Below are positions 2,442 to 40,641 of a stretch of 64,000 nt of DNA, piece after piece; position 1 is the first letter of the stretch, and each line of letters starts with the position of its first letter. The notes beneath the pieces were generated by a model, which was not told the origin of the DNA, ran no database searches, and saw only the letters and a program-made list of their open reading frames with translations. Location of the stretch: positions 62,001 through 126,000 of the IMG/VR virus record IMGVR_UViG_3300028384_001500. One strand, given 5' to 3'. The translations under genes and the position numbers were made by a program.

Positions 2442-3119
2442 TTAACTCCTTAAAACTTGAATAATTTTATCTGCCTTTGCGATTCTTTCTTCAATAACAG
2501 GCCATCTTAAAAGCTTCATCATGGCACGTGTATATGTATCTACGTCTTTTAAATAGTCTCTATAATAAGCGTGTTGCCATGCGTCCATTACAATAATAGG
2601 ATAAGAACCAAAAGGGACGTTGTTTGTGTGTAAGTCTACAACTGCATTCATGTATGTTTGGGTATAAGTGTTTAGATAAGTTATTGCCCATCCGCATTGA
2701 GAAGCAGACATACAAGCCATAAAATCTTTTTGCCATGCATCAAAACTACCAAAGTCTCTTGCTAATCTCATGTATGCAAGCGAGTCCATTTTTATTTCTG
2801 AATGAGGATCACCAATATTTGAAAAATACAGCTCATGAAGATAAACACCATTCATATTAAAGGCTTCATCAAGCTTTAAAGAGCGAAATTCTGAGTGATT
2901 GCAGTTAACGTTTGATTTGTCAACTGTGTCTAACTTTGCACTAATTTTATTAAAGTTTTTTAAGTAACCTTGATAAAGTTCAACGTGATTTTGAAAATTA
3001 TCTTTACTTAAAAAGTCAGAGTTAAAAGTAAAAGACTTTTCTTGCGCGCTTAATGCTTCATTAAGATTTAATGTTTCTTTGATAATTTCTTTTGCTTTTT
3101 TACTAAAAAGATCTTTCAT
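2442..3119 (-). CDS. sod: Fe/Mn superoxide dismutase
   Basis: Ligands NHVELY, LHELYF, D-A-W-Q-H-A-Y-Y; FGSFDAW and GWA motifs. Confidence 0.9.
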   Translation of the reverse strand: MKDLFSKKAKEIIKETLNLNEALSAQEKSFTFNSDFLSKDNFQNHVELYQGYLKNFNKISAKLDTVDKSNVNCNHSEFRSLKLDEAFNMNGVYLHELYFSNIGDPHSEIKMDSLAYMRLARDFGSFDAWQKDFMACMSASQCGWAITYLNTYTQTYMNAVVDLHTNNVPFGSYPIIVMDAWQHAYYRDYLKDVDTYTRAMMKLLRWPVIEERIAKADKIIQVLRS

Positions 3120-3399: not shown

Positions 3400-3816
3400 T
3401 CAAACATCACTTAATTTTTTTACTTCTACGCCGCACCCTTTTAATATCTCAATACCTGTCATATCTGGTTCATAGTCTTTTATGTACAAAACTTTGTCAA
3501 TCCCAGCGTTAACAATACATTTTGCGCAAACAGGGCATGGAGAATGTGTTAGATACATTTTCTTTTTCTTTGGGTTATTAAAATCACACTTAATAAGCGC
3601 GTTAACTTCGGCGTGTATAAATCCGCTTCTTCCTGTTTCTAAACTATCACGCTGATTAGGGCCGCCTTTATGATCACCGTTATATCCAAGTGCTAAAACT
3701 TGCGTATTGTCCTCAGTTACAATAACAGCGCCCACTTGAAACTTTTGATCAGGTGAGCGCTTGGAAATGTTTGTAACAAATTCGGACCAAATTGAATTCC
3801 AATCAGGTCTATTCAT
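3400..3816 (-). CDS. dCMP deaminase
   Basis: HAE and PCPVC zinc motifs, VGAVIV, GYNG. Confidence 0.92.
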   Translation of the reverse strand: MNRPDWNSIWSEFVTNISKRSPDQKFQVGAVIVTEDNTQVLALGYNGDHKGGPNQRDSLETGRSGFIHAEVNALIKCDFNNPKKKKMYLTHSPCPVCAKCIVNAGIDKVLYIKDYEPDMTGIEILKGCGVEVKKLSDV

Positions 3817-4670: not shown

Positions 4671-5249
4671 TTAGTCTCTCATATAATTATGGTGTAATTG
4701 ACATCTTGCTTCATAAAGTTCTGACCCACCTACTTGAATTTGATTATTACCTTTTGTGTTTGAAAGACTGTTTTGTGTTTTTCTTGCTGTGTACCTCGCA
4801 TCAGACTGACACACAGTACACACTGCAGTACATTTTTCTATTTTTGTACAATAAGGCATAATGTTTTTTACCTCCTCAAAAGGTTCTCCCGTGAAGGAAA
4901 GGTCGATAGAAGCTACAATTACATTATAACCTTTTTTAAAAAGTTTTACACAAGCCTCAGCACCATTTTGAATTAAAAACAACTCGTCAATAATAACACT
5001 GTCTATTTCAGATAACTCTTCTAATTCAACAATCTTGTTTATGATTTCATCGCCTGACGACACTAGATGCGCCGGCAATTTATTAAAGTTATGTGTAACT
5101 ATTTCTCCAAACTCAGAATATCGATCATCCATTCTAGACTTAAAAGAAACAATTTTTTGTTTTTGATATTGACGCTTATCAGCCTCCATCAAAAGCCTAG
5201 TTGTTTTTGAACTAAACATAGGACCGGTATACAAAATCAATTCAGTCAT
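4671..5249 (-). CDS. tdk: Thymidine kinase
   Basis: GPMFSSKTT Walker A, IDE, AVCTVC and QVGGSELYEARC zinc lasso. Confidence 0.93.
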   Translation of the reverse strand: MTELILYTGPMFSSKTTRLLMEADKRQYQKQKIVSFKSRMDDRYSEFGEIVTHNFNKLPAHLVSSGDEIINKIVELEELSEIDSVIIDELFLIQNGAEACVKLFKKGYNVIVASIDLSFTGEPFEEVKNIMPYCTKIEKCTAVCTVCQSDARYTARKTQNSLSNTKGNNQIQVGGSELYEARCQLHHNYMRD

Positions 5250-6258
5250 CTAACCCCCACCATTTATAAGTTCTTTCCATTCCTTCCCAAAAGTGCACCA
5301 AAGGCTCATAACCAAAGTCTTTATTGGCTTTTTTCCAGCTAGCTAATGTGTGTTTTACATCACCAGGCCGCTCAGGAGCATGTTTTACTTTGACTTTATC
5401 GCCAAAGCGCTCTTTCATTGCATCAAGTATTTCGTTATTTGATACAAATTGTCTACAAGCAATATTATAGCAGTCGCCTTTAAAAGACTTTTTTGACATG
5501 GCTGCCAGAATGTTAGCACTTACAATATTGTCAATATAGCACATATCACGTGTTTGCTCACCATCTCCATCAGATCTACATTCCAATCCGTTAGCAATTG
5601 CGTGACACCATGCTGATACTGCCGTTGAATATGGGCTGTCTCCATATTGCCCAGGCCCAAAAACATTAAAGTATCTAAGGCAAACAATATCTAAGTTATA
5701 AAGCTTACATGCCATTTTTGAAAAATCTTCAATTGCTGATTTTTGCCAGGCATAAGGCGACTTTGGATCTTTTGGGTGTGTTTCAGGCGTTGGTAATACA
5801 TCAGCTCCTCCGTATACAGACGAAGAAGAAGCCCAAACAATTCTATCTACACATCCCCTTGCTGCTTCAAAAAGCTTTATAGTTTTTCCGATATTAACAT
5901 CTGTTGTATGATAAGGTTGCTCTACAGAGTAGCTCACACGCGGTACAGCTGCTTGATGAAACACAACGTCGTACATTCCTTGCATAATCGCATTGCAAGT
6001 ATTGTCATTTGCAAAGTCATCCTCAATTACCAATACTTCATCTTGTGGACGGTCTTTTCCTTCTTTTGATAATGCATATTGGTATGCATCATAAAAACTT
6101 CCGTTAGGTATCATTCTTGTGTTTAGTCCGTCAAGTAACTCATAATGACCATTTGACATGTCATCAACAATATCTACTTGCCAACCTTTTTTAACCAGTG
6201 CTTTTGTGAGATTACTACCAATAAAACCACACCCACCTGTTACTAAAGCTTTTTTCAT
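5242..6258 (-). CDS. NAD-dependent NDP-sugar epimerase/dehydratase (extended SDR)
   Basis: TGGCGFIG, HQAA, SSSSVYG, YAWQK (YxxxK), LRYFNVFGP, RPGDVKH. Confidence 0.92.
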   Translation of the reverse strand: MKKALVTGGCGFIGSNLTKALVKKGWQVDIVDDMSNGHYELLDGLNTRMIPNGSFYDAYQYALSKEGKDRPQDEVLVIEDDFANDNTCNAIMQGMYDVVFHQAAVPRVSYSVEQPYHTTDVNIGKTIKLFEAARGCVDRIVWASSSSVYGGADVLPTPETHPKDPKSPYAWQKSAIEDFSKMACKLYNLDIVCLRYFNVFGPGQYGDSPYSTAVSAWCHAIANGLECRSDGDGEQTRDMCYIDNIVSANILAAMSKKSFKGDCYNIACRQFVSNNEILDAMKERFGDKVKVKHAPERPGDVKHTLASWKKANKDFGYEPLVHFWEGMERTYKWWGLDD

Positions 6259-8107: not shown

Positions 8108-8662
8108 TTACAACACTACTTCGATATCACTAGCGTCAATGCCTGTACTATATATTACTTTATCTCTACCTTCTAGTCCTTTAATCTCCATAAGAAACCA
8201 GAAACCTGCAACATTACCTTCCAGTGCTTTAACAATATCAGCAACTGCAACTGCCGTTCCACCTGTCGCTAGAACATCATCAACAATAAGAATGTTTTCA
8301 TCAGTCCTGATATCATCTTTGTGGATCTCAACTCTATCTTTGCCGTATTCTAGGCCATAATCTTGATGCACAACATCGCGAGGCAACTTTCCTGCTTTCC
8401 TAGCAAGTACTAGGGGTAAACCGGTTTCGTACGCAAGAAGTGATCCAAAGAGAAAACCTCGTGACTCTATTGCAACAATTTTGTCAAAGGCGCGGCCGCT
8501 GTTTTTAATAAAACGTGCTTGTGCCTTAATTAGATTTTTAAGCTCACTTTGATCTTGCAATAAGGGTGTAATATCTTTAAATGTAATTCCTGGCTTTGGA
8601 AAATCAGGTACATCAATAATTAGTTTTTGAATTCTTTTTAACATAAAATCGTATTCGCTCAT
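8108..8662 (-). CDS. apt: Adenine phosphoribosyltransferase
   Basis: DFPKPGITFKDITPLL, IESRGF, RKAGKLP, LEYG, ILIVDDVLATGGT. Confidence 0.95.
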   Translation of the reverse strand: MSEYDFMLKRIQKLIIDVPDFPKPGITFKDITPLLQDQSELKNLIKAQARFIKNSGRAFDKIVAIESRGFLFGSLLAYETGLPLVLARKAGKLPRDVVHQDYGLEYGKDRVEIHKDDIRTDENILIVDDVLATGGTAVAVADIVKALEGNVAGFWFLMEIKGLEGRDKVIYSTGIDASDIEVVL

Positions 8663-9688: not shown

Positions 9689-10600
9689 CTAAATAATATG
9701 TCCTGAATTAATTTTAATTTCTATTTTGCAATAATCACCTTGACGGTCACATTTAAAATATCGAAAAACTTCTGCTGTAAGATGTTTAATAAAGTTAAGA
9801 TCATATGACAGTGTTTCTTTCACATTTGATGATCGTAAAAAGAACTTTGCGTCCATGTGGCCATCACGAACTAAAAAATGAGCAAGGCTAATACAAGAAT
9901 TATCAGTGTAAATATATCTTCTCGAGTCCAACCCTTCTGCTCTTTCGTACTCATTTTCACCTCGCATTTCTGCTTTAATTTTATTAAATACTGCATTTTC
10001 AATTTTTCGGTAGTATTCTTTTTCTTTGTGGTAGTTTAACATTGTTTTGTTGACGTCGGAAAAATCGCCTGTATCATAATGAACAAAATTAAGGCCTAGT
10101 ACTTCGTTGCCGCTTTTAAGGGCTGCCATTTGTGTTGCTGCGTTACTGAGGTTGGCCATAGAATCATTTTCCAGTTTATAATACTGGTTTACTAAGTCTT
10201 TGACTAACTGTTTATCCACAACCTTACCAATAACTGTCACATTAGGATAATTGCCAAATTCATCAGCAGCCTCTTGAAAAAGATCGTATATTTTTCTAAG
10301 ACTAGTGATGTTTTGAATTGGATCACCTCGTTTTTGAAAACGATCAACAATTACCTTCCATTCAGGCAAGCAGATAATTGTTTGGTTGTTTAAGTTGTGT
10401 AATTCTCGTTTTAATTGTTCAACGTGATTAAAAGTGTCGCGACCGTAATAACGAGCGTGAATAAGCATAGAAAGTGCAGATCGATCTTGAATATTCCACT
10501 TATATCCTGTTTCTTTATGAATCATTTCATAAAGAGTTGTTTTTCCACTACAATCAGGGCCTTCAATAAAAATATAATCAATTGGTGTGCTGTGTGACAT
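9689..10600 (-). CDS. dNMP (thymidylate-type) kinase fused to a truncated ThyA/dCMP-hydroxymethylase-fold domain
   Basis: N-terminal IFIEGPDCSGKTT and QDRS; C-terminal DSRRYIY, SCISLAHFLVRDG, RSSNVKETLSYD, NSGHII. Confidence 0.72.
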   Translation of the reverse strand: MSHSTPIDYIFIEGPDCSGKTTLYEMIHKETGYKWNIQDRSALSMLIHARYYGRDTFNHVEQLKRELHNLNNQTIICLPEWKVIVDRFQKRGDPIQNITSLRKIYDLFQEAADEFGNYPNVTVIGKVVDKQLVKDLVNQYYKLENDSMANLSNAATQMAALKSGNEVLGLNFVHYDTGDFSDVNKTMLNYHKEKEYYRKIENAVFNKIKAEMRGENEYERAEGLDSRRYIYTDNSCISLAHFLVRDGHMDAKFFLRSSNVKETLSYDLNFIKHLTAEVFRYFKCDRQGDYCKIEIKINSGHII

Positions 10601-10621
10601 TTATTACCTCATTTATATAGT

Positions 10622-11625: not shown

Positions 11626-14073
11626 TCAAATAAGAAAGTCATTATAAGCTTCTGGCCATGGGACGTTGTTTGCTAGCGAATAGCTTTGCCATCTGAGCTT
11701 CCCGTCAATCACATACTTTACAATTTCATAAAGAGACAAGGCCCAACCGTATGTTTCAGGGTTATTCATTTCAGGTTGATCTTCATATTCTTGTAAGTAA
11801 GCAATTATTTCTGCCATATAGTCGTGAATATTATTAATTGTCCTATATCCTCTTTCGTATAATTTTACTATTTTTGCATGCTCTATTCCCATTTCAGATG
11901 CCGGCATCATAGCTTCCATCCATTGATCTTGAAAAATTTCTTGTAAATCAACGACACTATTTCGATCAACAAATATAGAGATATTTTCAGCTAGCCTTTT
12001 TGTCTTTCCTGCTTGGGCTTTATATGATTGAAAGTTTGGTCCTTTAATTAACGGATCTTCTCGCAACTTAAATATGACTGATGCAGCATTAACTCTAGGT
12101 GTTGTTCTAAAGTCTAGCATACCGTTTCTATAATTTTGTGGGTTTAATAAGATTTCTCTGTGTATTGCTCTTTCGTACACTTTGATTGGATAAATTGGAT
12201 CAAGATGTATTTTGCTGCCAAAATAATAAAACGAATTAAGTTCAGCAGCAGAATCAAGATATTTTAAAAATGTACTAGGTAATTTTTCTTCTATCATTGC
12301 AAACGTTTTGTTATCAGCATACGTCGCAAATGTACTTATTAGCTTATCATGTTTTCCTTGTATTTCGCCAAATTCGTTAGACACGACATTTCCTTGACCT
12401 GGTAGAGTACGCATTTGATAGTTAAAACTGCCGTGGAATTCTCTTAATTTTAAATCTTCAGGGCAATTTGGATGTGTTGTTAAGACAAGTGTATGCCGTC
12501 TAGCATTATCGGCGTCTCTTTGACTGTTAAAAAGTTCATATAACGCTGTTATATGTTCAGGTGTTAAGCCGGGGTGTCGAATAATTCTTGTAAAATAGTA
12601 GTCTCGAGGTGGATTAGGATCGTTCCATTCATTACCAGAAATTACGTTATTTGTGACAATATCTTCAACCATTTCATTGAATAGCTCAGGCGTAGGTTCT
12701 CGTTTATAAATTTGAATCCCATAGTACTGGTTCATATCCAAAGTGTTTGTTGTGTCAATAAAGTTATGTAATATTCCCGAAGGTATTTTTCCGCCATTTT
12801 TTGCCTTTTCTGATCTATACACTTTTGTCATAAAATCAGGAGGTAAAGGTAGAATTGACTTAATTAACGCGTCAAAAGGAACATGTTCTATTGCGACTGC
12901 TGCTACTTCTGGCCGTGCTGAATTTCTAAAACTTATCGGGTGTCTGTAAACTGCCCGCTCAGGATCTTTGACCATTTCAATAAAAATGTCAACGTTCGAA
13001 GAATATTGACATATACCTCTAACTTGCTCTGCAAATAAATTTAAATCTTCCGGAGAAGTAGCAGCTGCTCTTAAGTCTCTATATTGATCAAGCGTTAATG
13101 ACTTATAATAAGCAATTATATCTACTGTCTTTCTACTAGGTTTTTTAACATCAGCCTCAATCAAATCATAAAGTCTTTGTCCTATGTGTCTAATAATTGT
13201 TTCTTTTGATGCTGGTTTGTTGTCACCGTTAACTGTCGCATGCCCATCACTGCGCAATTCAACGTGATCACCCTGTTTGACAAAACTTAGACAAAATTTT
13301 CGCTCTGGAGCGCGTGGGTTATAGTCGCCAACACGAGTTAGATAATACATATGCAAGTTCATTTTTTTGTGATAGTTAAGGAACATATTTCCACTTCCAT
13401 CGACTGTTGTGCACCATGTCATATTACCTAGCTGTGCTTTATCAATAGGTGAGTTAGGGTTAAGATAATTATAGTTTGGCCCCATACGCCCTAATGATAT
13501 TGATCCTTTATAGGTTTTAGGATAAGCAACAAAGTAAGGATTAGAGCTAGATGGCATAGCAATAACTTCAAACTCTGATGTTTGACCATTAACACCGTCA
13601 GCGATTACTTGGTTAAGTACATCAGTTCTTTTACCTACTCCTGATCCACTTTCTATATATTCCATTGCTTCATTGTATGTTAAAGTTGTGTTGTCAGGTT
13701 GTACTACATCGATCTTTGGTAGAAGATCAATAAACTGATTTGCAGTCCCTCTAACAGGACGTGGCGGTAATTCACCTCGTCGAGCATTATTAATAATCTT
13801 ATTTAAGATATCTTTACCACCTTGGGCTATATCTCTAAGACTATGTCCTTGACCACCGTCATTAAGTGTATTGAAAAGTATTTTTGCCATGATCGGATCG
13901 TTAAACGGAGGTTTCCAGTCATTTCCAAAAACATACATTTTAAAGTCTTGATCACTAATAATTCCCCTTTGGATAAATTGATTAAATGACCTTTTCTTTA
14001 TTTCAGTAAGAAGACTAGCCTCTTTTAGATAATTTTCAATTATCAAAGACAGTTGTTTGCGTGTTACTTTCAC
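11626..14073 (-). CDS. Leader-bearing large protein with a WCT-motif domain and helical repeats
   Basis: MKVTRKQLSLIIENYLKEA leader (GTG start, GGAG RBS); TWCTT...NMFLNY; HPGLTPE and HPNCPED repeats. Confidence 0.7.
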   Translation of the reverse strand: MKVTRKQLSLIIENYLKEASLLTEIKKRSFNQFIQRGIISDQDFKMYVFGNDWKPPFNDPIMAKILFNTLNDGGQGHSLRDIAQGGKDILNKIINNARRGELPPRPVRGTANQFIDLLPKIDVVQPDNTTLTYNEAMEYIESGSGVGKRTDVLNQVIADGVNGQTSEFEVIAMPSSSNPYFVAYPKTYKGSISLGRMGPNYNYLNPNSPIDKAQLGNMTWCTTVDGSGNMFLNYHKKMNLHMYYLTRVGDYNPRAPERKFCLSFVKQGDHVELRSDGHATVNGDNKPASKETIIRHIGQRLYDLIEADVKKPSRKTVDIIAYYKSLTLDQYRDLRAAATSPEDLNLFAEQVRGICQYSSNVDIFIEMVKDPERAVYRHPISFRNSARPEVAAVAIEHVPFDALIKSILPLPPDFMTKVYRSEKAKNGGKIPSGILHNFIDTTNTLDMNQYYGIQIYKREPTPELFNEMVEDIVTNNVISGNEWNDPNPPRDYYFTRIIRHPGLTPEHITALYELFNSQRDADNARRHTLVLTTHPNCPEDLKLREFHGSFNYQMRTLPGQGNVVSNEFGEIQGKHDKLISTFATYADNKTFAMIEEKLPSTFLKYLDSAAELNSFYYFGSKIHLDPIYPIKVYERAIHREILLNPQNYRNGMLDFRTTPRVNAASVIFKLREDPLIKGPNFQSYKAQAGKTKRLAENISIFVDRNSVVDLQEIFQDQWMEAMMPASEMGIEHAKIVKLYERGYRTINNIHDYMAEIIAYLQEYEDQPEMNNPETYGWALSLYEIVKYVIDGKLRWQSYSLANNVPWPEAYNDFLI

Positions 14074-14100: not shown

Positions 14101-17100
14101 TTAATCAGTTACTAAAGGTCTTACTTTTCTTGAACTAGTGCTAGCACCCCAATTAGGATCGTTAGATGCGTCAGTTAACCATATTGAATACGGCACCATT
14201 GTTTCAGGTTTCTCGCCCCACATTCTTAACCAGCCTGTGTTGTTTTCATAGTCTGTAATTTTAAGTCGATAAAAAGTCTTTTTATTCTTAGTTGTCTTTT
14301 TAATCATGTCAACAATACAACACCAAGCAATGCATTTTTCACCAGGTAACATTTTAAGAACTGACTTAACGCCTGCTGATTGTATTTTTTCCATCATATC
14401 ATCTGGGAAAGCAAGATCATCACGTGTTGCTGAACAAAGATCTTGATACATTGTTAACTTGTCAATTCTACCCCAGTCTTCAATGTCTTTTGTTTGATCA
14501 ATAAGAATAGGCAGGATAGGGTCAGCATCTTTTTTCTTTGCTTGCCGGAGTGTCATACCATACTTTGACTTTTTAAGTGTGTTATAATTTTCAATAATAA
14601 TTTCGTAAAGCTGTTTATGATTATTGATTGTTCCATCCCACATTTCTTGCAGGCCATTAAATGCCTCAACTTGACATAGAGATGCAAAACCGGTTTTGTT
14701 AAGTTTAGAGTGACGCCATTTACCTTCATCATTGAACAACATGTCAGCAACTGATTTATATGGCCTGTTTTGCATAATTTCAACAACTGCTGTTTTACCT
14801 ACACCTTTGATTGATGTTAAGGGTGGTATAAAGGCTTTTTTCTTATCAGACCATTGCCAATATGTACCTGATTCGTTAACATCTGGCAATTCAACACGGT
14901 AACCCATTTCTTTAATTTCAGCAATTGCCTTGGTTAATGCGTTAGGGTTATTGTTTTCTGACTCAAGAATAGTACCTAACCAGTCTGTTTCGTAGTAAGT
15001 ATGCAACCATGCTGCGTAATACGAACCGATTGCATATGCGACAGCATGCGACTTATTAAAACCATAAACTGAGAAGAATTCAATACGCTCCCATAGTTCT
15101 TGCGAGACATGCTCTGGCACACCATTAATTTCTTTCGCACCGGTTACAAACTTAATGCGTGCAGCTTCACGTTCATCACCTTTCTTACCCATTGTATCGA
15201 GAGATTTTTTAACCAAGGTTTTACGAAGTTTATCTGACTCAGCTGGTGTGAAACCGCCTAACTTTTGTGCAAGAAGCATAAACTGTTCTTGAAAGGTAAC
15301 ATGACCAAACGTCGGTCCAAGAATATCCTTAATGATAGGATGATCATAGTGGATTTCATCAGCACGCATTTTATCTTTTACATATTTCTTGTGCACGTTT
15401 GCTCGAAGTGGACCTGGTCGATAAATAGCTGTAAGTGCGGCTAATTCAATAATTGTTGTTGGTTTAGCATCTTCACAAAAGCGACGAGCACCTTCAGCAG
15501 TAAATTGAAAAACACCTACCTTGCGACGCTGATGGTATACATGTTTCCAAACCTCAGGATCGTCTTGTTCTACATAACGACAATTTAGATGCTTATCAAA
15601 CCAATCACGAATTTCTAGAAATGTAGGTTCTTTACCTGTTTCACGCGTCAAAATACGCTTAATGCAGTTTTCAACGTCTTTAAGTAGTGTTAAGCCAAGA
15701 AAGTCAAACTTAATAAACCCGTTATCTTCAAGATTACGAAAGTTCATACCTTCTGTCCACGGTGTTTGTAGTTCACCTCGCACACCAATAATAGGCATGC
15801 CGCGAGCTAAATCATCAGCTGGGCCAATAATAACACCACCTGCGTGTCGACCAATCGATCGATTTTGCATGAATAGTGCTTCGATATGATCCTTTACTTT
15901 TGGGTATTTTTCCATAAAAGAGCGGTAACCTTTTGAATATGTCATGCAGTCTTCGTGTTTAAGAACAAATACAGACTTTTCAGTATTTTCATCACGAGCT
16001 TGAGACATCACCTCATCTTGTAAAGGGCCGGTCATTTTATTTACTTCAGCAAAGTCGACACCGTAAAACTTAGCGATATCTTTAACAAGTGATTTAAGCT
16101 TAAGTGTGTTAAAGTTGGAGACAGGAATTACAGCTTCATCGCCATATAGTTCACGGGCAGCGTTAATTAGCGCATCACGATCACCAGCATCAGAGTCGAT
16201 ATCGGGCCACGAAGTACGATGTCGACCTAGAAAACGCTCCCATAGCAAATCATATTTAAGTGGATCAACTTGGGTAATCCCTAATAAGTAATTTACTAAT
16301 GAGCCTCCACCAGAGCCACGGGCTGCGCCAAATAGAGTATGATCTGCTGCCTTATGAAAGACTTCATTCATTACTAAGAAGTAGTTTTCGAATCCGAGGA
16401 ACTTGATGTCTTCGAGCTCGTGTTTTGCTCGTTCAACGTATTCAGTTTTTGTATGAAGGCCTTCTTTAACAAGTGCTTGTTTGACTTTTTGCGCCAGCTG
16501 TTGAAAAGCAGTTTGATTAGGGTTGTTGAAATCGGGAAGCTTAACAGAAGTATCAATCCAACAGTCTTCACACTTTTGCCATGCAATATCATGTGTAATT
16601 TCAATCGATCTTTTAATTGTTTCTTCATATCCTTCGTATGTTTCTTTATATTCGTCATAATGTCGTGTAAATTCATCCCACATCTGTGTTGCGTTCTTTG
16701 GATAAAGCTCACATTTTAGATCTTCAAACTCTGGTAACGGACTTGGGTCGTTACCCATCCACCCTAATTTTTTATAAAGTTCTCTTGCCTCCCATTTATC
16801 AGGTGAATAATAGTGTGAGTCTGGCGTGGATATCAGCTGTAAACCTGTTTGATCAGCATGCCGCAAGAGATGATGATTAACAAGGTGCTGCTGTTTAAGT
16901 CGATTAAATTGCAACTCTAAGTAGAAGTTATCTTCACCTACAGCGTCAACAAATCGCTCAGATAAGTATGACAGTTCTTGCTGAATTTGCTCGTCTGATA
17001 TTTTTAAAGCATTACCACGCATAATACGATTAGAATATATTCCACCTAGACAGGCTGTAGAAACATTGAGCCCTTTACCGTATTGTCTAAGCAGGTCAAA

Positions 17101-17619
17101 GTCAATACGAGGATATCTATAAAAGCCATCAGTATAAGCACGTTTAATTAGAGTAAATAAGTTACCTAAACCTTCACGGTTTTGCGCAGTAACTACCAGA
17201 TGATAACGTCGTTTCCATTCGTCTTTACCTAAATCAAAAGACTTAGTTTCTTCTTCGTTTTCAATGATATGACCACCTTCTTCCTCTTCTTTGATTGCCT
17301 TTTTCTTTGCAGCAGCTCGATCGATTTTAGCTTGTTCATAATCAGCTTTCCAGTCTTTAAGTGAAGGAACAAAATAAAACTCACAACCGTAAATCTGACG
17401 AAACTTACGACCAGACTTTTTAACTTTTTCAGCATGCTTATGAGCATGTGCCAATCCACTACCGTTTCCATGATCAGTTAATGCCCAAGCATCCATGCCG
17501 TTTTCTAGTACAAAGTCAATATGGTCAGAGGGGTACCCTAATCCATCAAAAACAGAAAAACCTGTGTGACCGTGAAAACCAACAAATCGATCGGGCGGGG
17601 TAAGTAATTTGATATCCAT
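14101..17619 (-). CDS. dnaE: DNA polymerase III alpha subunit (family C)
   Basis: PHP HGHTGFSVFDG/TDHG/DSH, GAARGSGGGSLV, PDIDSD, GRHAGG, KFDFLGL, FQF, YRPGP, YGFNKSHAVAY. Confidence 0.96.
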   Translation of the reverse strand: MDIKLLTPPDRFVGFHGHTGFSVFDGLGYPSDHIDFVLENGMDAWALTDHGNGSGLAHAHKHAEKVKKSGRKFRQIYGCEFYFVPSLKDWKADYEQAKIDRAAAKKKAIKEEEEGGHIIENEEETKSFDLGKDEWKRRYHLVVTAQNREGLGNLFTLIKRAYTDGFYRYPRIDFDLLRQYGKGLNVSTACLGGIYSNRIMRGNALKISDEQIQQELSYLSERFVDAVGEDNFYLELQFNRLKQQHLVNHHLLRHADQTGLQLISTPDSHYYSPDKWEARELYKKLGWMGNDPSPLPEFEDLKCELYPKNATQMWDEFTRHYDEYKETYEGYEETIKRSIEITHDIAWQKCEDCWIDTSVKLPDFNNPNQTAFQQLAQKVKQALVKEGLHTKTEYVERAKHELEDIKFLGFENYFLVMNEVFHKAADHTLFGAARGSGGGSLVNYLLGITQVDPLKYDLLWERFLGRHRTSWPDIDSDAGDRDALINAARELYGDEAVIPVSNFNTLKLKSLVKDIAKFYGVDFAEVNKMTGPLQDEVMSQARDENTEKSVFVLKHEDCMTYSKGYRSFMEKYPKVKDHIEALFMQNRSIGRHAGGVIIGPADDLARGMPIIGVRGELQTPWTEGMNFRNLEDNGFIKFDFLGLTLLKDVENCIKRILTRETGKEPTFLEIRDWFDKHLNCRYVEQDDPEVWKHVYHQRRKVGVFQFTAEGARRFCEDAKPTTIIELAALTAIYRPGPLRANVHKKYVKDKMRADEIHYDHPIIKDILGPTFGHVTFQEQFMLLAQKLGGFTPAESDKLRKTLVKKSLDTMGKKGDEREAARIKFVTGAKEINGVPEHVSQELWERIEFFSVYGFNKSHAVAYAIGSYYAAWLHTYYETDWLGTILESENNNPNALTKAIAEIKEMGYRVELPDVNESGTYWQWSDKKKAFIPPLTSIKGVGKTAVVEIMQNRPYKSVADMLFNDEGKWRHSKLNKTGFASLCQVEAFNGLQEMWDGTINNHKQLYEIIIENYNTLKKSKYGMTLRQAKKKDADPILPILIDQTKDIEDWGRIDKLTMYQDLCSATRDDLAFPDDMMEKIQSAGVKSVLKMLPGEKCIAWCCIVDMIKKTTKNKKTFYRLKITDYENNTGWLRMWGEKPETMVPYSIWLTDASNDPNWGASTSSRKVRPLVTD

Positions 17620-18109: not shown

Positions 18110-19102
18110 TTAAAAGAATTCTGTCAAGTCAATGTTTTTTTCTTCTGCTTCTTCAAGAAAACGAAGCGGATTGTAACCTTCTGATTTTAATATGCTTTCA
18201 AACGACATTCGAATTCCTTCTTCTAGTGATATTCTAGGAGACCAGCCAGTATACTCTCTGACCTTTTTACCACTTAAGATATGATTTCCCATATACTCTG
18301 TCTGCGGGAGCCATTCAATTGTATCTGCAAAACTCTGGCCGCAAACACGATCCATAAGTGATACTATCTCACCGGTGACAAGCGGTGTTTCAGCAGCGAT
18401 ATTAAAGTCGTTATTCCAGCACTTTTCTTCTTTAATGCAAGAAAAGACACCGTCACAATAGTCATTGACATGTAGGTAGTCTTTGATTTTTGTTGGATCC
18501 AAAAACATTTGGACCTTTTTTACGCCGTTTAGCTTCGCGTAAATTGTTTTGGCAATGAGTGAATTCATATCACCGTCACCACCGTAAGCAAAGAGAGGTC
18601 GTACAATCATCCATTTATCACTATGTGACTTGACTACTTCTTCAGCTGCCAATTTTTGGCATCCATAAAATGTATGCGGGCCTCTATCTGAATTTTCTTT
18701 TATTTGGCTTTGCTGGTATTTTTCCGTTGCATAGATGACAGTTGTACCCATATAACAAACAGGAATACCACATTTCTTTGCCGCACGGCAGATGTTAAAT
18801 GTGCCTTGCACGTTTGTTAACGTCGACTCTTTTGAGTTAAGAGCAACAACATCAGTACCAACAACTGCTGCGTTGTGGATGACAACATCAATATCGTTAA
18901 CTTCAAAAAACTTTTGCCATGCTGTTTCGCTATTACGGTGAATACAAGGTTCACCTTTTTCTGTGGTATATTGTGACACATACGCTGCATCTTCATTTAA
19001 TTCATGTACACCTGATATAAATTGAAAACCGTGCATCTTTGCCCGTTTGGCAAGATTAGTGCCGATAAAGCCGCGTTCACCTGTTATAAAAACTTTTGAC
19101 AT
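18110..19102 (-). CDS. Second NAD-dependent NDP-sugar epimerase/dehydratase
   Basis: ITGERGFIG, HNAAVVG, YGCQK (YxxxK), RPLFAYG, KDYLHVND. Confidence 0.88.
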   Translation of the reverse strand: MSKVFITGERGFIGTNLAKRAKMHGFQFISGVHELNEDAAYVSQYTTEKGEPCIHRNSETAWQKFFEVNDIDVVIHNAAVVGTDVVALNSKESTLTNVQGTFNICRAAKKCGIPVCYMGTTVIYATEKYQQSQIKENSDRGPHTFYGCQKLAAEEVVKSHSDKWMIVRPLFAYGGDGDMNSLIAKTIYAKLNGVKKVQMFLDPTKIKDYLHVNDYCDGVFSCIKEEKCWNNDFNIAAETPLVTGEIVSLMDRVCGQSFADTIEWLPQTEYMGNHILSGKKVREYTGWSPRISLEEGIRMSFESILKSEGYNPLRFLEEAEEKNIDLTEFF

Positions 19103-25689: not shown

Positions 25690-26676
25690 TTATTGTCTCC
25701 CCATAAATTGATTATGTTCTTGTGTTAGTTCGTTAATTTCGCTTAAAGCATTTTCCCATAGCTTTGTAAATACTGTGTCGCCACCTGGGTTTTCTGTACC
25801 ATTAATGTCTTCCCGGCGTGATTGATATATACTGTCATTTGGGTGATAATCAAAGATATCATTCTTGGGTTCTGGCCAGTAAAGATTCGTACCTCTAGAT
25901 GTGTGACCACCTTTACCATCAGGTACTCGGAAAGTTTTAACGTAATGCATATCTGGTTTGCCGAAATTAATACGTGTACTTGCTTCAGGTAAAACTTTAA
26001 GTACTTCTCGTGCCATGTATGCAGCAAGCAGATTATCAGCTGCAGGTTGAATTTGCATATCTTGACGTTGAGCAATAAAACCTAACAGATCTTTTAAATT
26101 AAGACGCATTAGATAGAATGACGTCATTGCTTTTGGAAGTATCATTCGAGCGTCCATCATAGATACAGCTTTTGAGTCTGTCATATCTGCGTAGAGCTGT
26201 TTTGACTCACGTACGAGACGGCGCCACCTATCAGCAAACTCAGGACTATTTTGTACTGATTCAGGAATAACTGCATCGTCATGGCGCAAGTCGCGGTCAC
26301 CTGTACATTGTGCTGCAAAAGAACCAGCACGATGGCGAATAATATGAGTAACTTCTTGAAATGAAAGCCCTGACAATTTAAAGGTAAAACCTAGACATTC
26401 CATAGGGGTTGGTAATGCACGAAAATTAAGTACATCTTCAAGATTTTCTGACAACTCTTTTAAAGAAGCTGTTGCCGGGTTTGTGTCATCGTGATGATCA
26501 GCCCAAGTAGCTTTTACATATTGCCATGCAACATTAAGCGCTTGAGATCGAGTTGGTGCATCTACAAGTTCTACTTTAAGTGCTTTAAGGTTATTATGAA
26601 ATGTTGTTTTTGGTTCTTCACCAAACTTTAAATCCATTGGTAAAGTAATAGGAATTAAATTTAAGTTTTGAGGCAT
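25690..26676 (-). CDS. thyX: Flavin-dependent thymidylate synthase-like protein (divergent)
   Basis: THIIRHRAGSFAAQC (RHRx7S with Cys), DARMILP, NLKDLLGFIAQR. Confidence 0.75.
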   Translation of the reverse strand: MPQNLNLIPITLPMDLKFGEEPKTTFHNNLKALKVELVDAPTRSQALNVAWQYVKATWADHHDDTNPATASLKELSENLEDVLNFRALPTPMECLGFTFKLSGLSFQEVTHIIRHRAGSFAAQCTGDRDLRHDDAVIPESVQNSPEFADRWRRLVRESKQLYADMTDSKAVSMMDARMILPKAMTSFYLMRLNLKDLLGFIAQRQDMQIQPAADNLLAAYMAREVLKVLPEASTRINFGKPDMHYVKTFRVPDGKGGHTSRGTNLYWPEPKNDIFDYHPNDSIYQSRREDINGTENPGGDTVFTKLWENALSEINELTQEHNQFMGRQ

Positions 26677-27954: not shown

Positions 27955-28168
27955 ATTTCACCTCTTTATTATTTATTTTAAAGTTATTAAATTCATTTAA
28001 ATAATAATCAAACATGTCATTTTTTACATTATTAAAAATAAACATTGTGTCTTTTGTTTCAACGCTACCAGAAATTAAAACGTTTCCAACCATATTTTTT
28101 TTAATGGTTGAAAACGTCTTTTTGTTATCTGGTAATTCCTTTCCGTTAAAAATTACCTTAGTACCCAT
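27908..28168 (-). CDS. Hypothetical protein
   Basis: Overlaps both neighbours within the operon. Confidence 0.55.
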   Translation of the reverse strand: MGTKVIFNGKELPDNKKTFSTIKKNMVGNVLISGSVETKDTMFIFNNVKNDMFDYYLNEFNNFKINNKEVKFVIQTHDEPSKGIQQ

Positions 28169-28535
28169 TCCTTAACCTCTCCTTAATTATCTTGTGTTTT
28201 GATAAAAAAGCTTGATAAAGGTCATTCTCATCAAATCCTGTCACAATAAGCATTGCAAAAAAGTAGTTAAATGCGTCAACAATCTCTTCTAAAAATTCAT
28301 CTTTGTCAACTTCTGGTATATCAGTTTGGCGATGAGGTTTCCAATTTTTAAGATGCTGTAGTGCTTCAAACATTTCTTCAACGCCTTTAAGCGCTAAATC
28401 TCTGCAAACTTGCTGTGATTCTTTTTGTGACATGTCAAGAGGAAAGTCAGGATAAGAGCCGGGGATGTTTTCTTTCATTTCATTAATAAAATCTAATCGC
28501 TTATCAAACATTTCTTTAAGTTTGCAATTAGTCAT
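28158..28535 (-). CDS. MazG-superfamily all-alpha dUTPase/dCTPase
   Basis: GVEEMFEALQHLKNWKPH; FLEEIVDAFNYF. Confidence 0.8.
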   Translation of the reverse strand: MTNCKLKEMFDKRLDFINEMKENIPGSYPDFPLDMSQKESQQVCRDLALKGVEEMFEALQHLKNWKPHRQTDIPEVDKDEFLEEIVDAFNYFFAMLIVTGFDENDLYQAFLSKHKIIKERLRNGY

Positions 28536-40640: not shown

Positions 40641-40641
40641 A

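What the first reader, a model, noticed from the sequence alone, without database searches (positions are those of the whole stretch)
9689..10600. dNMP kinase fused to a ThyA-fold domain with the dCMP-specific Asp: candidate novel cytosine-modifying enzyme
Seen: the C-terminal half has DSRR, a Cys at the catalytic position (9893-9895, CISLAHF aligning to ThyA CHxxxQF), RS-x9-D (9800-9835) and S-G-H. Known: that 12th position is Asn in dUMP-specific ThyA and Asp in T4 gp42 dCMP hydroxymethylase. Here the RSxD Asp is Asn and the N-terminal folate-binding part seems missing. Inference: a possibly folate-independent dCMP-modifying enzyme that channels its product to a fused kinase, combining the T4 gp42 and gp1 roles with perhaps different chemistry. 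A separate ThyX can supply dTMP.
Basis: partly seen in the sequence, partly recalled or inferred. Interest (0 to 1): 0.86.

Follow-up and report, generated by a model that had tools for sequence, protein, structure and literature searches.

The report
Kinase fused to minimal thymidylate-synthase-like domain
An uncultured 237-kb marine phage encodes a nucleotide kinase fused to a stripped-down thymidylate-synthase-like domain with the cytosine-specific Asp and all core catalytic residues, so it probably makes a 5-modified deoxycytidine nucleotide for phage DNA; this fusion does not appear in the literature I could search.

Summary
ORF 9689-10600 (minus strand, 303 aa) has two domains.

- **Kinase domain:** residues 1-139 form a YorR/thymidylate-kinase-like P-loop kinase.
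- **ThyA-fold domain:** residues 140-303 form a 164-residue thymidylate-synthase (TS) fold (AF2 pLDDT 92). Its best structural matches are the flavin-dependent phage dCMP hydroxylases 9iqu and 9iqc (TM 0.62), followed by T4 dCMP hydroxymethylase.
- **Retained residues:** the SRR pair, Cys236, Arg256-Ser257 and His301 are kept in 65-67 of 68 diverse homologues. Asp267, at the ThyA Asn177 position, is the only invariant column.
- **Missing parts:** the domain is about 75-100 residues shorter than known family members. It lacks the usual folate-pocket elements, and Pfam's TS model does not detect it.
- **Distribution:** the fusion is conserved in about 590 metagenomic clusters. It always sits in a phage nucleotide-metabolism module, and ThyX lies within 10 kb in 13 of 32 related loci.
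- **Link to known systems:** in 5-hydroxycytosine phages, a homologous small kinase gene lies beside the 5-hydroxy-dCMP synthase gene.

Best reading: a bifunctional dCMP C5-modifying enzyme plus kinase. The chemistry is unproven. Hydroxylation is favoured, but the diagnostic D169N position varies (N/D/E) within the family. I rate it a new variant of a known kind.

The parts
9689..10600 (-). Whole ORF, 303 aa: kinase + minimal TS-like fusion protein (stop codon included)
   Evidence: ORF list and sequence. AF2 full-length mean pLDDT 92.7, pTM 0.88.
10606..10610 (-). GAGGT Shine-Dalgarno-like site 5 nt upstream of the ATG
   Evidence: Read directly from the sequence.
10184..10600 (-). Residues 1-139: YorR/thymidylate-kinase-like P-loop nucleotide kinase domain
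   Evidence: PHROG 761 thymidylate kinase, 1.4e-10. Family profile vs PDB: YorR 2axp 2.1e-13, thymidylate kinases 1e-4 to 5e-3. BFVD fold hits to phage thymidylate kinases, target-normalised TM-score (TMt) 0.55-0.61. Pfam Thymidylate_kin matched by 39 of 68 members at E<=1.
10535..10561 (-). Walker A / P-loop, G14-P-D-C-S-G-K-T-T22
   Evidence: Sequence. G14, D16, G19 and K20 are at least 90% conserved in 68 homologues. A GPDxxGK[ST] P-loop is present in most full-length representatives (59 of 64, counted from the printout).
10481..10486 (-). D39-R40, the 'DR' nucleotide-binding motif of thymidylate-kinase/dNK-type kinases
   Evidence: At least 90% conserved. Aligned to the DR of YorR and of thymidylate kinases.
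10322..10342 (-). R87-x3-R91-G92-D93, LID-like arginine motif
   Evidence: At least 90% conserved. Aligned to RLRVRGD of YorR.
9692..10183 (-). Residues 140-303: minimal thymidylate-synthase-fold domain (164 aa)
   Evidence: Domain-only AF2 pLDDT 92.2. Foldseek vs PDB: 9iqu and 9iqc query-normalised TM-score (TMq) 0.62, T4 dCH 0.57-0.59, MilA 0.56-0.59, ThyAs 0.37-0.55. hhalign vs T4 gp42 93.5%, RB69 gp48 84.6%, E. coli ThyA 55%.
10022..10024 (-). E193, candidate equivalent of ThyA E58 / T4 gp42 E60 (motif E-x-x-Y-Y vs E-x-x-W-Y/F)
   Evidence: Present in 65 of 68. MAFFT L-INS-i and E-INS-i place it on T4 E60, and L-INS-i also on ThyA E58; the global mode does not. This mapping is inference.
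9917..9925 (-). S226-R227-R228, equivalent of ThyA S125-R126-R127 (phosphate-binding pair supplied by the partner subunit in ThyA)
   Evidence: R227 in 67 of 68, R228 in 66 of 68. Aligned.
9893..9895 (-). Cys236, equivalent of the catalytic nucleophile ThyA C146 / T4 C148
   Evidence: Present in 66 of 68. Aligned.
9824..9835 (-). R256-S257-S258-N259, equivalent of ThyA R166-S167-C168-D169
   Evidence: R256 and S257 each in 67 of 68. Position 259 is N in 37, D in 23, H in 4 and E in 2, with at least 11 N/D switches on the tree. In the viral loci it is N19/E6/D5.
9800..9802 (-). Asp267, equivalent of ThyA N177 / T4 gp42 D179 (pyrimidine specificity residue)
   Evidence: The only invariant column in 68 sequences that go down to 23% identity. 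Aligned to T4 D179 and to the RB69 Asp.
9698..9700 (-). His301, equivalent of ThyA H207. The protein ends two residues later, so ThyA Y209 and the C-terminal ~55 residues are absent.
   Evidence: Present in 65 of 68. Aligned.
25690..26676 (-). ThyX (flavin-dependent thymidylate synthase): an independent dTMP source in the same genome
   Evidence: Pfam Thy1 1.6e-18. TIGR02170 9.7e-12, below cutoff. A ThyX gene lies within 10 kb of the fusion in 13 other loci.
3400..3816 (-). dCMP deaminase (context: pyrimidine pool enzyme, conserved neighbour)
   Evidence: Pfam dCMP_cyt_deam_1 1.6e-20. Present in 27 of 32 loci.
28158..28535 (-). MazG-like nucleotide pyrophosphohydrolase, a candidate dCTP/dUTP-to-dNMP enzyme (role inferred)
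   Evidence: phrog_12184 5.1e-17. Pfam dUTPase_2 2.8e-4.

Best explanation
The gene encodes a bifunctional pyrimidine-nucleotide enzyme of a large uncultured marine phage.

**Proposed mechanism**
- The C-terminal 164 residues are a pared-down thymidylate-synthase-fold domain. I propose it binds dCMP as follows: phosphate by Arg227/Arg228 (probably from a dimer partner, as in ThyA) and Arg256/Ser257; the cytosine N3/N4 edge by the invariant Asp267; the 3'-OH by His301.
- Cys236 then attacks C6, and a substituent is installed at C5.
- The N-terminal YorR/thymidylate-kinase-like domain phosphorylates the product to the diphosphate, so that it can reach phage DNA.
- ThyX supplies dTMP separately.

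**Which substituent?** My ranking is:
1. Hydroxyl, by flavin/O2 chemistry as in AfhB and RB69 gp48.
2. Hydroxymethyl, from CH2-THF as in T4 gp42.
3. Methyl or something new.

**Shown here:** the two folds, the residue equivalences, their conservation, the conserved fusion and its genomic context.

**Inferred:** the substrate, catalysis, the cofactor, dimerisation, hand-over between the domains, and incorporation into DNA.

**Approximate confidences:** architecture 0.95; cytosine nucleotide as ligand 0.8; C5 modification 0.6; hydroxylation specifically 0.35.
For: **Fold**
- AF2 pLDDT is 92.7 for the full protein and 92.2 for the domain alone.
- In the domain-only Foldseek search all listed hits are thymidylate-synthase-family entries. 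The dCMP hydroxylases 9iqu and 9iqc rank first (E 1.1e-6 and 2.3e-6, TM 0.62). T4 dCMP hydroxymethylase (0.57-0.59) and MilA (0.56-0.59) score similarly. ThyAs score 0.37-0.55.

**Sequence**
- hhalign of the family profile gives T4 gp42 93.5% (E 2.3e-7), RB69 gp48 (a proven 5-hydroxy-dCMP synthase) 84.6%, and E. coli ThyA 55%.
- The PDB profile search gives T4 dCH E 0.012 and 9iqu/9iqc E 0.054.

**Conservation across 68 homologues, down to 23% identity**
- D267 is the only invariant column.
- C236 66/68, R227 67/68, R228 66/68, R256 67/68, S257 67/68, H301 65/68, E193 65/68.
- The ThyA L143 position is polar or acidic (D233), as in the hydroxymethylases and hydroxylases (rule taken from PMC13326640).

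**Kinase domain**
- It matches YorR at 2.1e-13 and thymidylate kinases.

**Fusion**
- The architecture is conserved in nearly all of 64 full-length representatives clustered at 50% identity, and in 31 of the 32 viral loci recovered (the 32nd copy is cut by the contig end).

**Gene-fusion ('Rosetta stone') link to known systems**
- In 5-hydroxycytosine phages a small TMPK/YorR-like kinase gene lies beside the 5-hydroxy-dCMP synthase gene.
- In phage IME341, gp235 is upstream of gp236 in the same order as in the fusion, and the two genes overlap by 4 nt.
- Other examples are DLP2_046, RB69 ORF045c, and DLP3_078, RB69p045 and RL38J1_214 in Table 1 of PMC13326640.
- These kinases are homologous to the fused domain (hhalign 96.3%, E 2e-9). 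T4 gp1 is not (2%).

**Context**
- The gene sits in a conserved module with DnaE polymerase (32/32 loci), dCMP deaminase (27), thymidine kinase (26) and, within 10 kb in 13 of the 32 loci, ThyX. dTMP synthesis is therefore already covered.
Against: - No member of the family reaches Pfam's Thymidylat_synt model even at E<=1.
- The domain is 164 aa, against 217-264 aa for characterised relatives. No counterpart of the R21 loop was found. W80/W83/Y94 cannot be traced with confidence. The loop before the Cys is 11-16 residues shorter. Everything after H207, including Y209 and the C-terminal tail, is absent. It is unclear where a folate or a flavin would bind.
- The D169 position, which is diagnostic for hydroxylases in the literature, is N/D/E here and flips repeatedly, even between close relatives.
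- No glycosyltransferase was detected by Pfam or PHROGs among the window's ORFs of at least 100 aa.
- The similarity to the cluster kinases covers only about 70 columns.
- No cultured relative exists, so there are no data on the virion DNA.
Confidence: 0.55

Rival explanations
1. The protein is the phage's thymidylate (or general dNMP) kinase. The TS-like domain is a degenerate, non-catalytic module that binds a cytosine nucleotide, either for allosteric control of the kinase or to dock it into a dNTP-synthesising complex.
For: The phage encodes thymidine kinase and ThyX, and no other P-loop NMP kinase was found in the window, so it needs a dTMP kinase. About a third of the TS fold, including the cofactor-pocket elements, the R21 loop, Y209 and the C-terminal tail, is missing. 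Pfam's TS model does not recognise the domain. Position 259 is unconstrained between N, D and E.
Against: A pure binding module would not be expected to keep the nucleophilic Cys in 66 of 68 sequences, together with the E58-like Glu (65/68), across lineages only 23-35% identical. The independent association of this kinase type with active 5-hydroxy-dCMP synthases in cultured phages argues for a catalytic partnership.
Confidence: 0.2
2. The TS-like domain is active but folate-dependent. It would be a dCMP hydroxymethylase (like T4 gp42) or a dCMP methylase, with the kinase domain or a dimer partner supplying the missing walls of the folate pocket.
For: By sequence the best match is T4 gp42 (hhalign 93.5%; PDB profile E 0.012). 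About a third of the family has Asp at the D169 position, as folate-dependent enzymes do. The full-length pTM of 0.88 implies a fixed packing between the domains.
Against: W80/W83 and the C-terminal tail that close over the folate in ThyA and dCH are absent or untraceable. The structural top hits are the flavin enzymes. The window protein itself has Asn259. For a methylase, the L143 position is not hydrophobic (rule from PMC13326640).
Confidence: 0.15
3. The protein is an ordinary dUMP-methylating thymidylate synthase fused to thymidylate kinase, taking dUMP through dTMP to dTDP in one protein.
For: The fold and the catalytic Cys are shared with ThyA. The kinase domain resembles thymidylate kinase.
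Against: The specificity residue is Asp in 68 of 68 sequences and never the Asn of dUMP enzymes. A ThyX gene accompanies the fusion in the window and lies within 10 kb in 13 of 32 related loci. Folate-pocket elements are missing. ThyA is the weakest of the three hhalign matches (55%).
Confidence: 0.03

Closest known systems
Flavin-dependent 5-hydroxy-dCMP synthases / dCMP hydroxylases (phage HY126 AfhB, PDB 9iqu and 9iqc; RB69 gp48; DLP3 gp80; RL38JI gp216)
   Same: TS fold, and the best structural matches (TM 0.62). Cys nucleophile, SRR and RS motifs. Asp at the N177 position. Asn at the D169 position in the window protein. A polar residue at L143. A C-terminal S-A-H motif like RB69's VSAHVF. 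A TMPK/YorR-like kinase as genomic partner.
   Different: The domain here is 164 aa, against 217-238 aa. It is about 47 residues shorter before the SRR motif and about 16 shorter before the Cys, and it has no tail after His301. It is covalently fused to the kinase. The D169-equivalent is not fixed in the family (N/D/E). No arabinose or other glycosyltransferase cluster was found nearby. Sequence identity is only 11-14% in the structural alignments.
T4 gp42 dCMP hydroxymethylase (PDB 1b5d, 1b49, 6a9a)
   Same: The best sequence-profile match (93.5%, E 2.3e-7). C148, D179, RS and SRR are all aligned. The family's conserved Arg245 matches the Arg in T4's LIRD. E193-x-x-Y-Y may match E60-x-x-W-Y.
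   Different: gp42 is 246 aa, depends on folate, and has Asp at the D169 position. It stands alone, and its kinase partner gp1 belongs to an unrelated kinase family and is encoded elsewhere (hhalign with the fused domain 2%).
ThyA thymidylate synthase (E. coli, 264 aa); DHFR-TS fusions of protozoa
   Same: The same fold and covalent-catalysis residues. DHFR-TS shows that TS-family domains can work in bifunctional fusions.
   Different: Asn177 is replaced by Asp. The R21 loop, the W80/W83 region, Y209 and the C-terminal 55 residues are missing or untraceable. The fusion partner is a kinase at the N-terminus, not DHFR. Pfam PF00303 does not detect the domain.
YorR (B. subtilis SPbeta prophage, PDB 2axp/3kb2) and the small 'thymidylate kinase'-annotated kinases of 5-hydroxycytosine gene clusters (IME341 gp235, DLP2_046, RB69 ORF045c)
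   Same: The (E/D)GPDxxGK(T/S)T Walker A, the DR(S/G)xxS motif and the RxxxRGD LID. YorR matches at E 2.1e-13. The cluster kinases match at hhalign 96.3%, E 2e-9.
   Different: Those proteins are free-standing, 173-182 aa. Their substrates are not established. Only about 70 columns align with the cluster kinases.

Membership tests
Thymidylate synthase / dCMP hydroxymethylase superfamily (ThyA fold) | TS alpha/beta fold with the central sheet and helix J | tested here: met
   In the domain-only Foldseek search all listed hits are TS-family entries with probability 0.99-1.00 and TM 0.37-0.62 normalised to the query. The full-length model gives the same families.
Thymidylate synthase / dCMP hydroxymethylase superfamily (ThyA fold) | Recognised by the curated sequence model (Pfam PF00303 Thymidylat_synt) | tested here: not met
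   None of 68 members matches PF00303, even at E<=1. Membership is visible only by profile-profile comparison and by fold.
Thymidylate synthase / dCMP hydroxymethylase superfamily (ThyA fold) | Catalytic Cys (C146), plus R166/S167 and the R126'/R127' phosphate clamp | tested here: met
   C236, R256/S257 and R227/R228 align, and are kept in 66-67 of 68 sequences.
Thymidylate synthase / dCMP hydroxymethylase superfamily (ThyA fold) | Catalytic Glu (E58) and Tyr (Y94) | tested here: inconclusive
   E193 (65/68) is placed on T4 E60 in two of three MAFFT modes, and on ThyA E58 in one. Y218 (51/68) lies within one column of T4 Y96 in one mode only.
Thymidylate synthase / dCMP hydroxymethylase superfamily (ThyA fold) | Folate pocket: W80/W83 helix, C-terminal tail, D169 | tested here: not met
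   The protein ends 2 residues after H207's equivalent. The region before SRR is about 47 residues shorter than in RB69 gp48. The D169 position is N/D/E.
Thymidylate synthase / dCMP hydroxymethylase superfamily (ThyA fold) | Obligate homodimer with a shared active site | not testable with these tools
   Only monomer models could be made. Retention of the SRR pair is consistent with a dimer.
dCMP-specific TS homologues (T4 gp42 type) | Asp in place of ThyA Asn177 | tested here: met
   D267 aligns to T4 D179 and to the RB69 Asp. It is invariant in 68 of 68.
dCMP-specific TS homologues (T4 gp42 type) | CH2-THF-dependent hydroxymethyl transfer | not testable with these tools
   This needs an enzyme assay. 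The pocket elements are largely absent (see above).
5-hydroxy-dCMP synthases (AfhB / RB69 gp48 type) | D169N together with N177D (signature proposed in PMC13326640) | tested here: inconclusive
   The window protein has N259 and D267. Across the family, however, position 259 is N37/D23/H4/E2, with at least 11 N/D switches, and N19/E6/D5 in the viral loci.
5-hydroxy-dCMP synthases (AfhB / RB69 gp48 type) | Closest structural neighbours are the flavin-dependent hydroxylases | tested here: met
   9iqu and 9iqc rank 1 and 2 (E 1.1e-6 and 2.3e-6, TM 0.62), ahead of T4 dCH. The margin is small.
5-hydroxy-dCMP synthases (AfhB / RB69 gp48 type) | Flavin cofactor and O2 as the oxygen source | not testable with these tools
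   No coordinates or ligand modelling were available. This needs UV-vis spectroscopy, HPLC and 18O2 labelling.
5-hydroxy-dCMP synthases (AfhB / RB69 gp48 type) | Genomic partnership with a TMPK/YorR-like nucleotide kinase | tested here: met
   The two are fused here and adjacent in IME341 (4-nt overlap), DLP2, RB69, DLP3 and RL38JI. The kinases are homologous.
5-hydroxy-dCMP synthases (AfhB / RB69 gp48 type) | Nearby DNA glycosyltransferases and sugar-nucleotide genes | tested here: inconclusive
   Two NDP-sugar epimerase/dehydratase genes are conserved neighbours. No glycosyltransferase was detected in the 64-kb window. The other 173 kb of the contig were not examined.
Thymidylate kinase / YorR-like P-loop nucleotide kinases | Walker A, DR motif, LID arginines, and a kinase fold | tested here: met
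   The motifs are at least 90% conserved. YorR matches at 2.1e-13 and thymidylate kinases at 1e-4 to 5e-3. PHROG 761 matches at 1.4e-10. BFVD thymidylate-kinase matches have target-normalised TM-score (TMt) 0.55-0.61. The window protein is below the Pfam and TIGR thymidylate-kinase cutoffs.
T4 gp1-type dNMP kinase | Sequence homology to gp1 (PDB 1dek) | tested here: not met
   hhalign probability 2.1%. gp1 is absent from the PDB hits at E<=10.

The most novel reading that the evidence does not exclude
The 164-residue domain is a new minimal class of the thymidylate-synthase superfamily. Its cofactor site would be built differently, for example jointly with the fused kinase or across a dimer. 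It would make a C5-modified cytosine nucleotide by a cofactor arrangement not seen in ThyA, dCH or AfhB, possibly giving a product not yet described. Because the family is abundant in ocean metagenomes, a whole lineage of 100-280-kb marine phages would carry modified cytosine that current sequencing-based viromics overlooks.
Probability: 0.2. Interest if true: 0.85.

Novelty: new variant of a known kind. Interest (0 to 1): 0.72.

Why it matters
**Biology.** If the protein is active, the catalytic core of the thymidylate-synthase fold can be cut to about 160 residues. The two first steps of pre-replicative cytosine modification would also be welded into one polypeptide. That would be a compact, portable module for making modified dCDP.

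**Ecology.** It would flag a widespread, uncultured lineage of large marine phages as likely carriers of non-canonical cytosine. The family has about 590 clusters at 90% identity, on contigs up to 285 kb. Modified cytosine would affect restriction and CRISPR evasion, library preparation bias and virome quantification.

**Annotation.** These proteins are currently labelled 'hypothetical' or 'deoxyadenosine/deoxycytidine kinase', and the TS-like half is invisible to Pfam.

**Wider question.** The fusion is independent genetic evidence that the small TMPK/YorR-like kinases found beside 5-hydroxy-dCMP synthases in T4-like and Rhizobium phages work together with those synthases. Their role is still unassigned in the literature.

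Tried and rejected
- **Single-sequence searches on the C-terminal half.** Pfam, PHROGs, NCBIfam and PDB phmmer found nothing for it. Only profiles and fold comparison revealed it.
- **Cultured relatives.** tblastn of the whole protein against 50,697 phage genomes gave no match. The UvsX-like recombinase is below 40% identical to anything cultured. There is no isolate to consult.
- **Alignment A2 for locus retrieval.** It was too divergent for the search for related loci, so A1 was used instead.
- **D169N as a classifier.** Rejected after the tree showed at least 11 N/D switches and no co-varying positions.
- **RB69 ORF045c as a direct pairwise match.** BLAST aligns only the P-loop, and its own PDB search is uninformative. 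The link became significant only with a three-sequence profile.
- **Cellular genomes.** There is one full-length relative, in a contig binned as a 'Methanobacteriota' MAG. It is probably a viral contig.
- **Stand-alone TS-like genes.** Nearly all the shorter hits are truncated gene calls. One possible free-standing copy (P0124) sits on a 1.7-kb contig at 1.9x coverage, and another is cut by the contig end.
- **Partners in the window.** I looked for a glycosyltransferase, DHFR or flavin reductase and found none by Pfam or PHROGs. Pterin-4a-carbinolamine dehydratase occurs near the fusion in 10 related loci but not in the window, and it does not track residue 259.
- **Model coordinates.** They are not exposed by the tools. 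I could therefore not measure whether the conserved N-terminal residues of the domain (E166, E193, Y196, Y197, E211, G214, N216) line the active site, or how the kinase packs on it.
- **The He et al. paper on HY126 AfhB.** It is not in the held library, so the flavin-contacting residues could not be compared.
Full report
**1. What is in the sequence.** Positions 9689-10600 on the minus strand hold one intact ORF of 303 codons. It has an ATG start preceded by GAGGT. All 61 ORFs of at least 100 aa that look like genes in the 64-kb window lie on the minus strand. G+C is about 35% and there are no tRNA genes.
- the P-loop GPDCSGKTT (residues 14-22);
- DSRR (225-228);
- Cys236 (9893-9895) within CISLAHF;
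- R256-S257-S258-N259, then D267 (9800-9802);
- S299-G300-H301, two residues before the stop.

**2. Two domains, both confirmed by fold.** AlphaFold2 on a 42-sequence alignment gives mean pLDDT 92.7 and pTM 0.88 for the whole protein. For residues 140-303 alone, on a separate 28-sequence alignment, it gives pLDDT 92.2.

Foldseek of the C-terminal domain against the PDB returns 210 hits at E<=0.001, and all 50 listed are thymidylate-synthase-family entries. The ranking is:
- phage HY126 dCMP hydroxylase AfhB (9iqu, E 1.1e-6, TM 0.62);
- a riboflavin-dependent monooxygenase with dCMP and FAD (9iqc, TM 0.62);
- T4 dCMP hydroxymethylase (TM 0.57-0.59);
- CMP hydroxymethylase MilA (TM 0.56-0.59);
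- ThyAs (TM 0.37-0.55).

The full-length model also hits phage thymidylate kinases (TM 0.55-0.61 on the target) and phage TS/dCH proteins in BFVD. By sequence, the N-terminal 139 residues match PHROG 761 'thymidylate kinase' (1.4e-10). As a family profile they match the SPbeta prophage protein YorR (2.1e-13) and thymidylate kinases.

**3. Active-site mapping and conservation.** Profile-profile comparison of a 68-member family alignment (identities down to 23%) gives:
- T4 gp42: 93.5%, E 2.3e-7;
- RB69 gp48, a proven 5-hydroxy-dCMP synthase: 84.6%;
- E. coli ThyA: 55%.

A PDB profile search gives T4 dCH at E 0.012 and 9iqu/9iqc at E 0.054. All these alignments agree on the following equivalences:

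| Residue here | ThyA equivalent | Kept in family (of 68) |
|---|---|---|
| R227 / R228 | R126 / R127 | 67 / 66 |
| C236 | C146 | 66 |
| R256 / S257 | R166 / S167 | 67 / 67 |
| N259 | D169 | variable (section 7) |
| D267 | N177 (T4 D179) | 68 |
| H301 | H207 | 65 |

D267 is the only invariant column in the whole protein. The residue three positions before the Cys (the ThyA L143 position) is D233, and it is polar or acidic in most members. E193 (65/68), in the motif E-x-x-Y-Y, is placed on T4 E60 / ThyA E58 by some but not all alignment modes. I treat that mapping as likely but unproven.

**4. What is missing.** The domain has 164 residues, against 217-238 for the hydroxylases, 246 for T4 dCH and 264 for ThyA.
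- It has about 47 fewer residues than RB69 gp48 before the SRR motif.
- It has an 11-16-residue deletion between the SRR strand and the Cys.
- It has nothing after the His301 strand, so ThyA Y209 and the C-terminal tail that closes over the folate are absent.
- No counterpart of the R21 loop was found. The helix bearing W80/W83 cannot be traced with confidence.
- No family member is detected by Pfam's Thymidylat_synt model, even at E<=1.

The losses, however, are internal and C-terminal rather than N-terminal.

**5. A conserved viral family in a conserved context.**
- The word-indexed search found 591 clusters at 90% identity. Many are from marine surveys, and none has an informative name.
- The exhaustive search with the TS-like domain alone found 120 representatives at 50% identity. 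Nearly all full-length ones are about 300 aa with the P-loop in front. The shorter ones are mostly truncated gene calls.
- The window is part of IMGVR_UViG_3300028384_001500, which is 236,652 bp. Thirty-one other viral contigs, up to 284 kb, carry homologues of 35-91% identity.
- Conserved neighbours within 10 kb are a DnaE-type polymerase (32/32 loci), SDR sugar-nucleotide epimerases/dehydratases (29), dCMP deaminase (27), thymidine kinase (26), a DHH phosphoesterase (26) and an Fe/Mn-SOD-like protein (26).
- ThyX, a nucleoside deoxyribosyltransferase-like protein, MazG-like pyrophosphohydrolases, GMP reductase and Fpg recur as well.
- No cultured phage carries the gene. The recombinase is below 40% identical to any isolate. 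Cellular genomes contain only one full-length copy, in a MAG contig that is probably viral.

**6. Comparison with what is known.** Lee et al. (NAR 2026, PMC13326640) showed that ThyA homologues with N177D and D169N make 5-hydroxy-dCMP using a flavin and O2. These enzymes are RB69 gp48, DLP3 gp80, RL38JI gp216 and metaviromic examples. The product is phosphorylated, incorporated into DNA and then glycosylated. The same paper cites the HY126 AfhB structure, which is the top fold match here.

Table 1 of that paper lists a TMPK/YorR-like 'nucleotide kinase' two or three genes from the synthase in all three phages. I confirmed this arrangement in public genomes:
- In Dhakavirus IME341, the kinase gene gp235 lies immediately upstream of the synthase homologue gp236 and overlaps it by 4 nt. 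This is the same order as in the fusion.
- DLP2_046 lies two genes from the synthase homologue.
- RB69 ORF045c lies three genes away.

A profile of these three kinases matches the fused kinase domain at 96.3%, E 2e-9, over the P-loop, the DR motif and the following strand. T4 gp1, the classical hmdCMP kinase, does not match (2%). The fusion is therefore a 'Rosetta stone' for a synthase-kinase partnership that exists as separate genes in known 5-hydroxycytosine phages. I found no description of such a fusion in the held literature.

**7. Why the chemistry stays open.** The window protein has the N259/D267 pair that the literature treats as the hydroxylase signature, and its nearest structures are the hydroxylases. 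In this family, however, position 259 is N (37), D (23), H (4) or E (2). It has switched between N and D at least 11 times on the tree, including in relatives 57-58% identical to the window protein. In the viral loci it is N19/E6/D5, and no other column co-varies with it.

Either the family changes chemistry often, or this residue is not decisive once the cofactor pocket has been remodelled. I think the second is more likely. By sequence T4 gp42 scores slightly better than RB69 gp48. With the usual pocket walls gone, I cannot say where a flavin or a folate would sit.

**8. Most likely mechanism and rivals.**
- **Best reading (0.55).** dCMP comes from dCTP/dCDP turnover, and MazG-like enzymes at 28158-28535 and 27001-27954 are candidate sources. 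It is bound by the TS-like domain, attacked at C6 by Cys236, substituted at C5, and passed to the fused kinase to become the diphosphate. ThyX, dCMP deaminase, dUTPase and thymidine kinase handle thymidylate separately. Within this reading I rank hydroxylation first, hydroxymethylation second, and methylation or something new third.
- **Rival 1 (0.2).** A thymidylate kinase carrying a degenerate cytosine-nucleotide-binding module.
- **Rival 2 (0.15).** A folate-dependent hydroxymethylase or methylase whose pocket is completed by the kinase domain or a dimer partner.
- **Rival 3 (0.03).** An ordinary dUMP-methylating thymidylate synthase fused to thymidylate kinase.

The near-invariance of the nucleophile and the independent synthase-kinase linkage argue against the first rival. 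The invariant Asp and the ever-present ThyX argue against the third.

**9. Verdict.** It is a new variant of a known kind: a TS-superfamily pyrimidine C5-modifying enzyme in a minimal form and in a new fusion. It is widespread in uncultured marine jumbo-type phages.

Noticed in passing
window 2442-3119 (-): An Fe/Mn superoxide-dismutase-like protein (Sod_Fe_C 8e-17) is encoded next to dCMP deaminase. It is conserved in 26 of 32 related phage loci, which is unusual for a phage nucleotide module. A link to an O2/flavin-using enzyme is pure speculation.
   Followed up: partly
window 5242-6258 (-) and 18110-19102 (-): Two SDR-family NDP-sugar epimerase/dehydratase genes (GalE, RmlB or LegB-like, all below equivalog cutoffs) are conserved near the fusion in 29 of 32 loci. 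No glycosyltransferase was detected in the window, so their sugar product and its target (DNA or host surface) are unknown.
   Followed up: partly
window 27001-27954 (-) and 28158-28535 (-): There are two MazG-like nucleotide pyrophosphohydrolases. The first is fused to a HAD/NT5C/PNK-phosphatase-like C-terminal part. They are candidates for clearing canonical dNTPs, analogous to T4 gp56. Their specificity is unknown.
   Followed up: partly
window 25239-25688 (-), beside ThyX 25690-26676: A nucleoside 2-deoxyribosyltransferase-family protein (Pfam 1.9e-16) lies directly downstream of ThyX. The same family recurs in 15 related loci. Members of this family include dNMP N-glycosidases, so it could degrade a particular nucleotide.
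   Followed up: no
window 8108-8662 (-): An adenine phosphoribosyltransferase scores above NCBIfam equivalog cutoffs (5.2e-61). This is a purine-salvage enzyme in a phage. It is present in only 5 of 32 related loci.
   Followed up: no
window 14101-17619 (-) and 51866-52933 (-): A DnaE-type Pol III alpha subunit (PHP, NTPase, finger and HhH domains) is the best-conserved neighbour (32/32 loci). A separate 355-aa ORF has a weak family-A polymerase C-terminal match, below cutoff.
   Followed up: no
window 11626-14073, 32270-34096, 35776-39645, 47877-50381, 52972-56580, 56890-60426 (all -): Six large ORFs (608-1289 aa) have no Pfam or PHROG match at all. The 815-aa one lies between the fusion gene and DnaE, and is shared by only 5 loci.
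   Followed up: no
L016:8907-9995 and 10 other related loci: In 11 related phage loci a GMP reductase/IMPDH-family gene (Pfam 6.6e-71) lies within about 1-3 kb of the kinase-TS fusion, in several loci immediately upstream. It is absent from the window.
   Followed up: partly
L031:20311-20730 and 9 other related loci: A pterin-4a-carbinolamine dehydratase gene lies about 8-10 kb downstream of the fusion in 10 loci. It is not in the window, and it shows no correlation with residue 259. It is interesting only because TS-fold enzymes bind pterins.
   Followed up: partly
L036 (PBHZ01000014.1, 26 kb): The only full-length homologue in 185,579 species genomes (36% identity) sits in a contig binned as a 'Methanobacteriota archaeon' MAG. 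It is probably a viral contig. If genuine, it would hint at the host.
   Followed up: no
L041 (ERZ840905 contig, 1702 bp): P0124 looks like a free-standing TS-like domain (177 aa) with no kinase upstream, followed by an epimerase fragment. The contig has only 1.9x coverage, so it may be an assembly artefact.
   Followed up: partly
L043:2968-4199 (phage IME341); L002:4048-6214 (RB69): In cultured 5-hydroxycytosine phages, the small kinase next to the synthase is annotated 'thymidylate kinase' or 'hypothetical', and the synthase is annotated 'thymidylate synthase'. In some records the labels are 'peptidase', 'RNA polymerase binding protein' or rIIA/rIIB. The annotation of this cluster is inconsistent across GenBank.
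   Followed up: no
window 19560-20642, 20664-21290, 39747-40691 (all -): Three cell-wall-hydrolase-like genes lie inside the replication module: a short TseH-like/NlpC-P60-type match, a Peptidase_C92 amidase and an endolysin/amidase.
   Followed up: no
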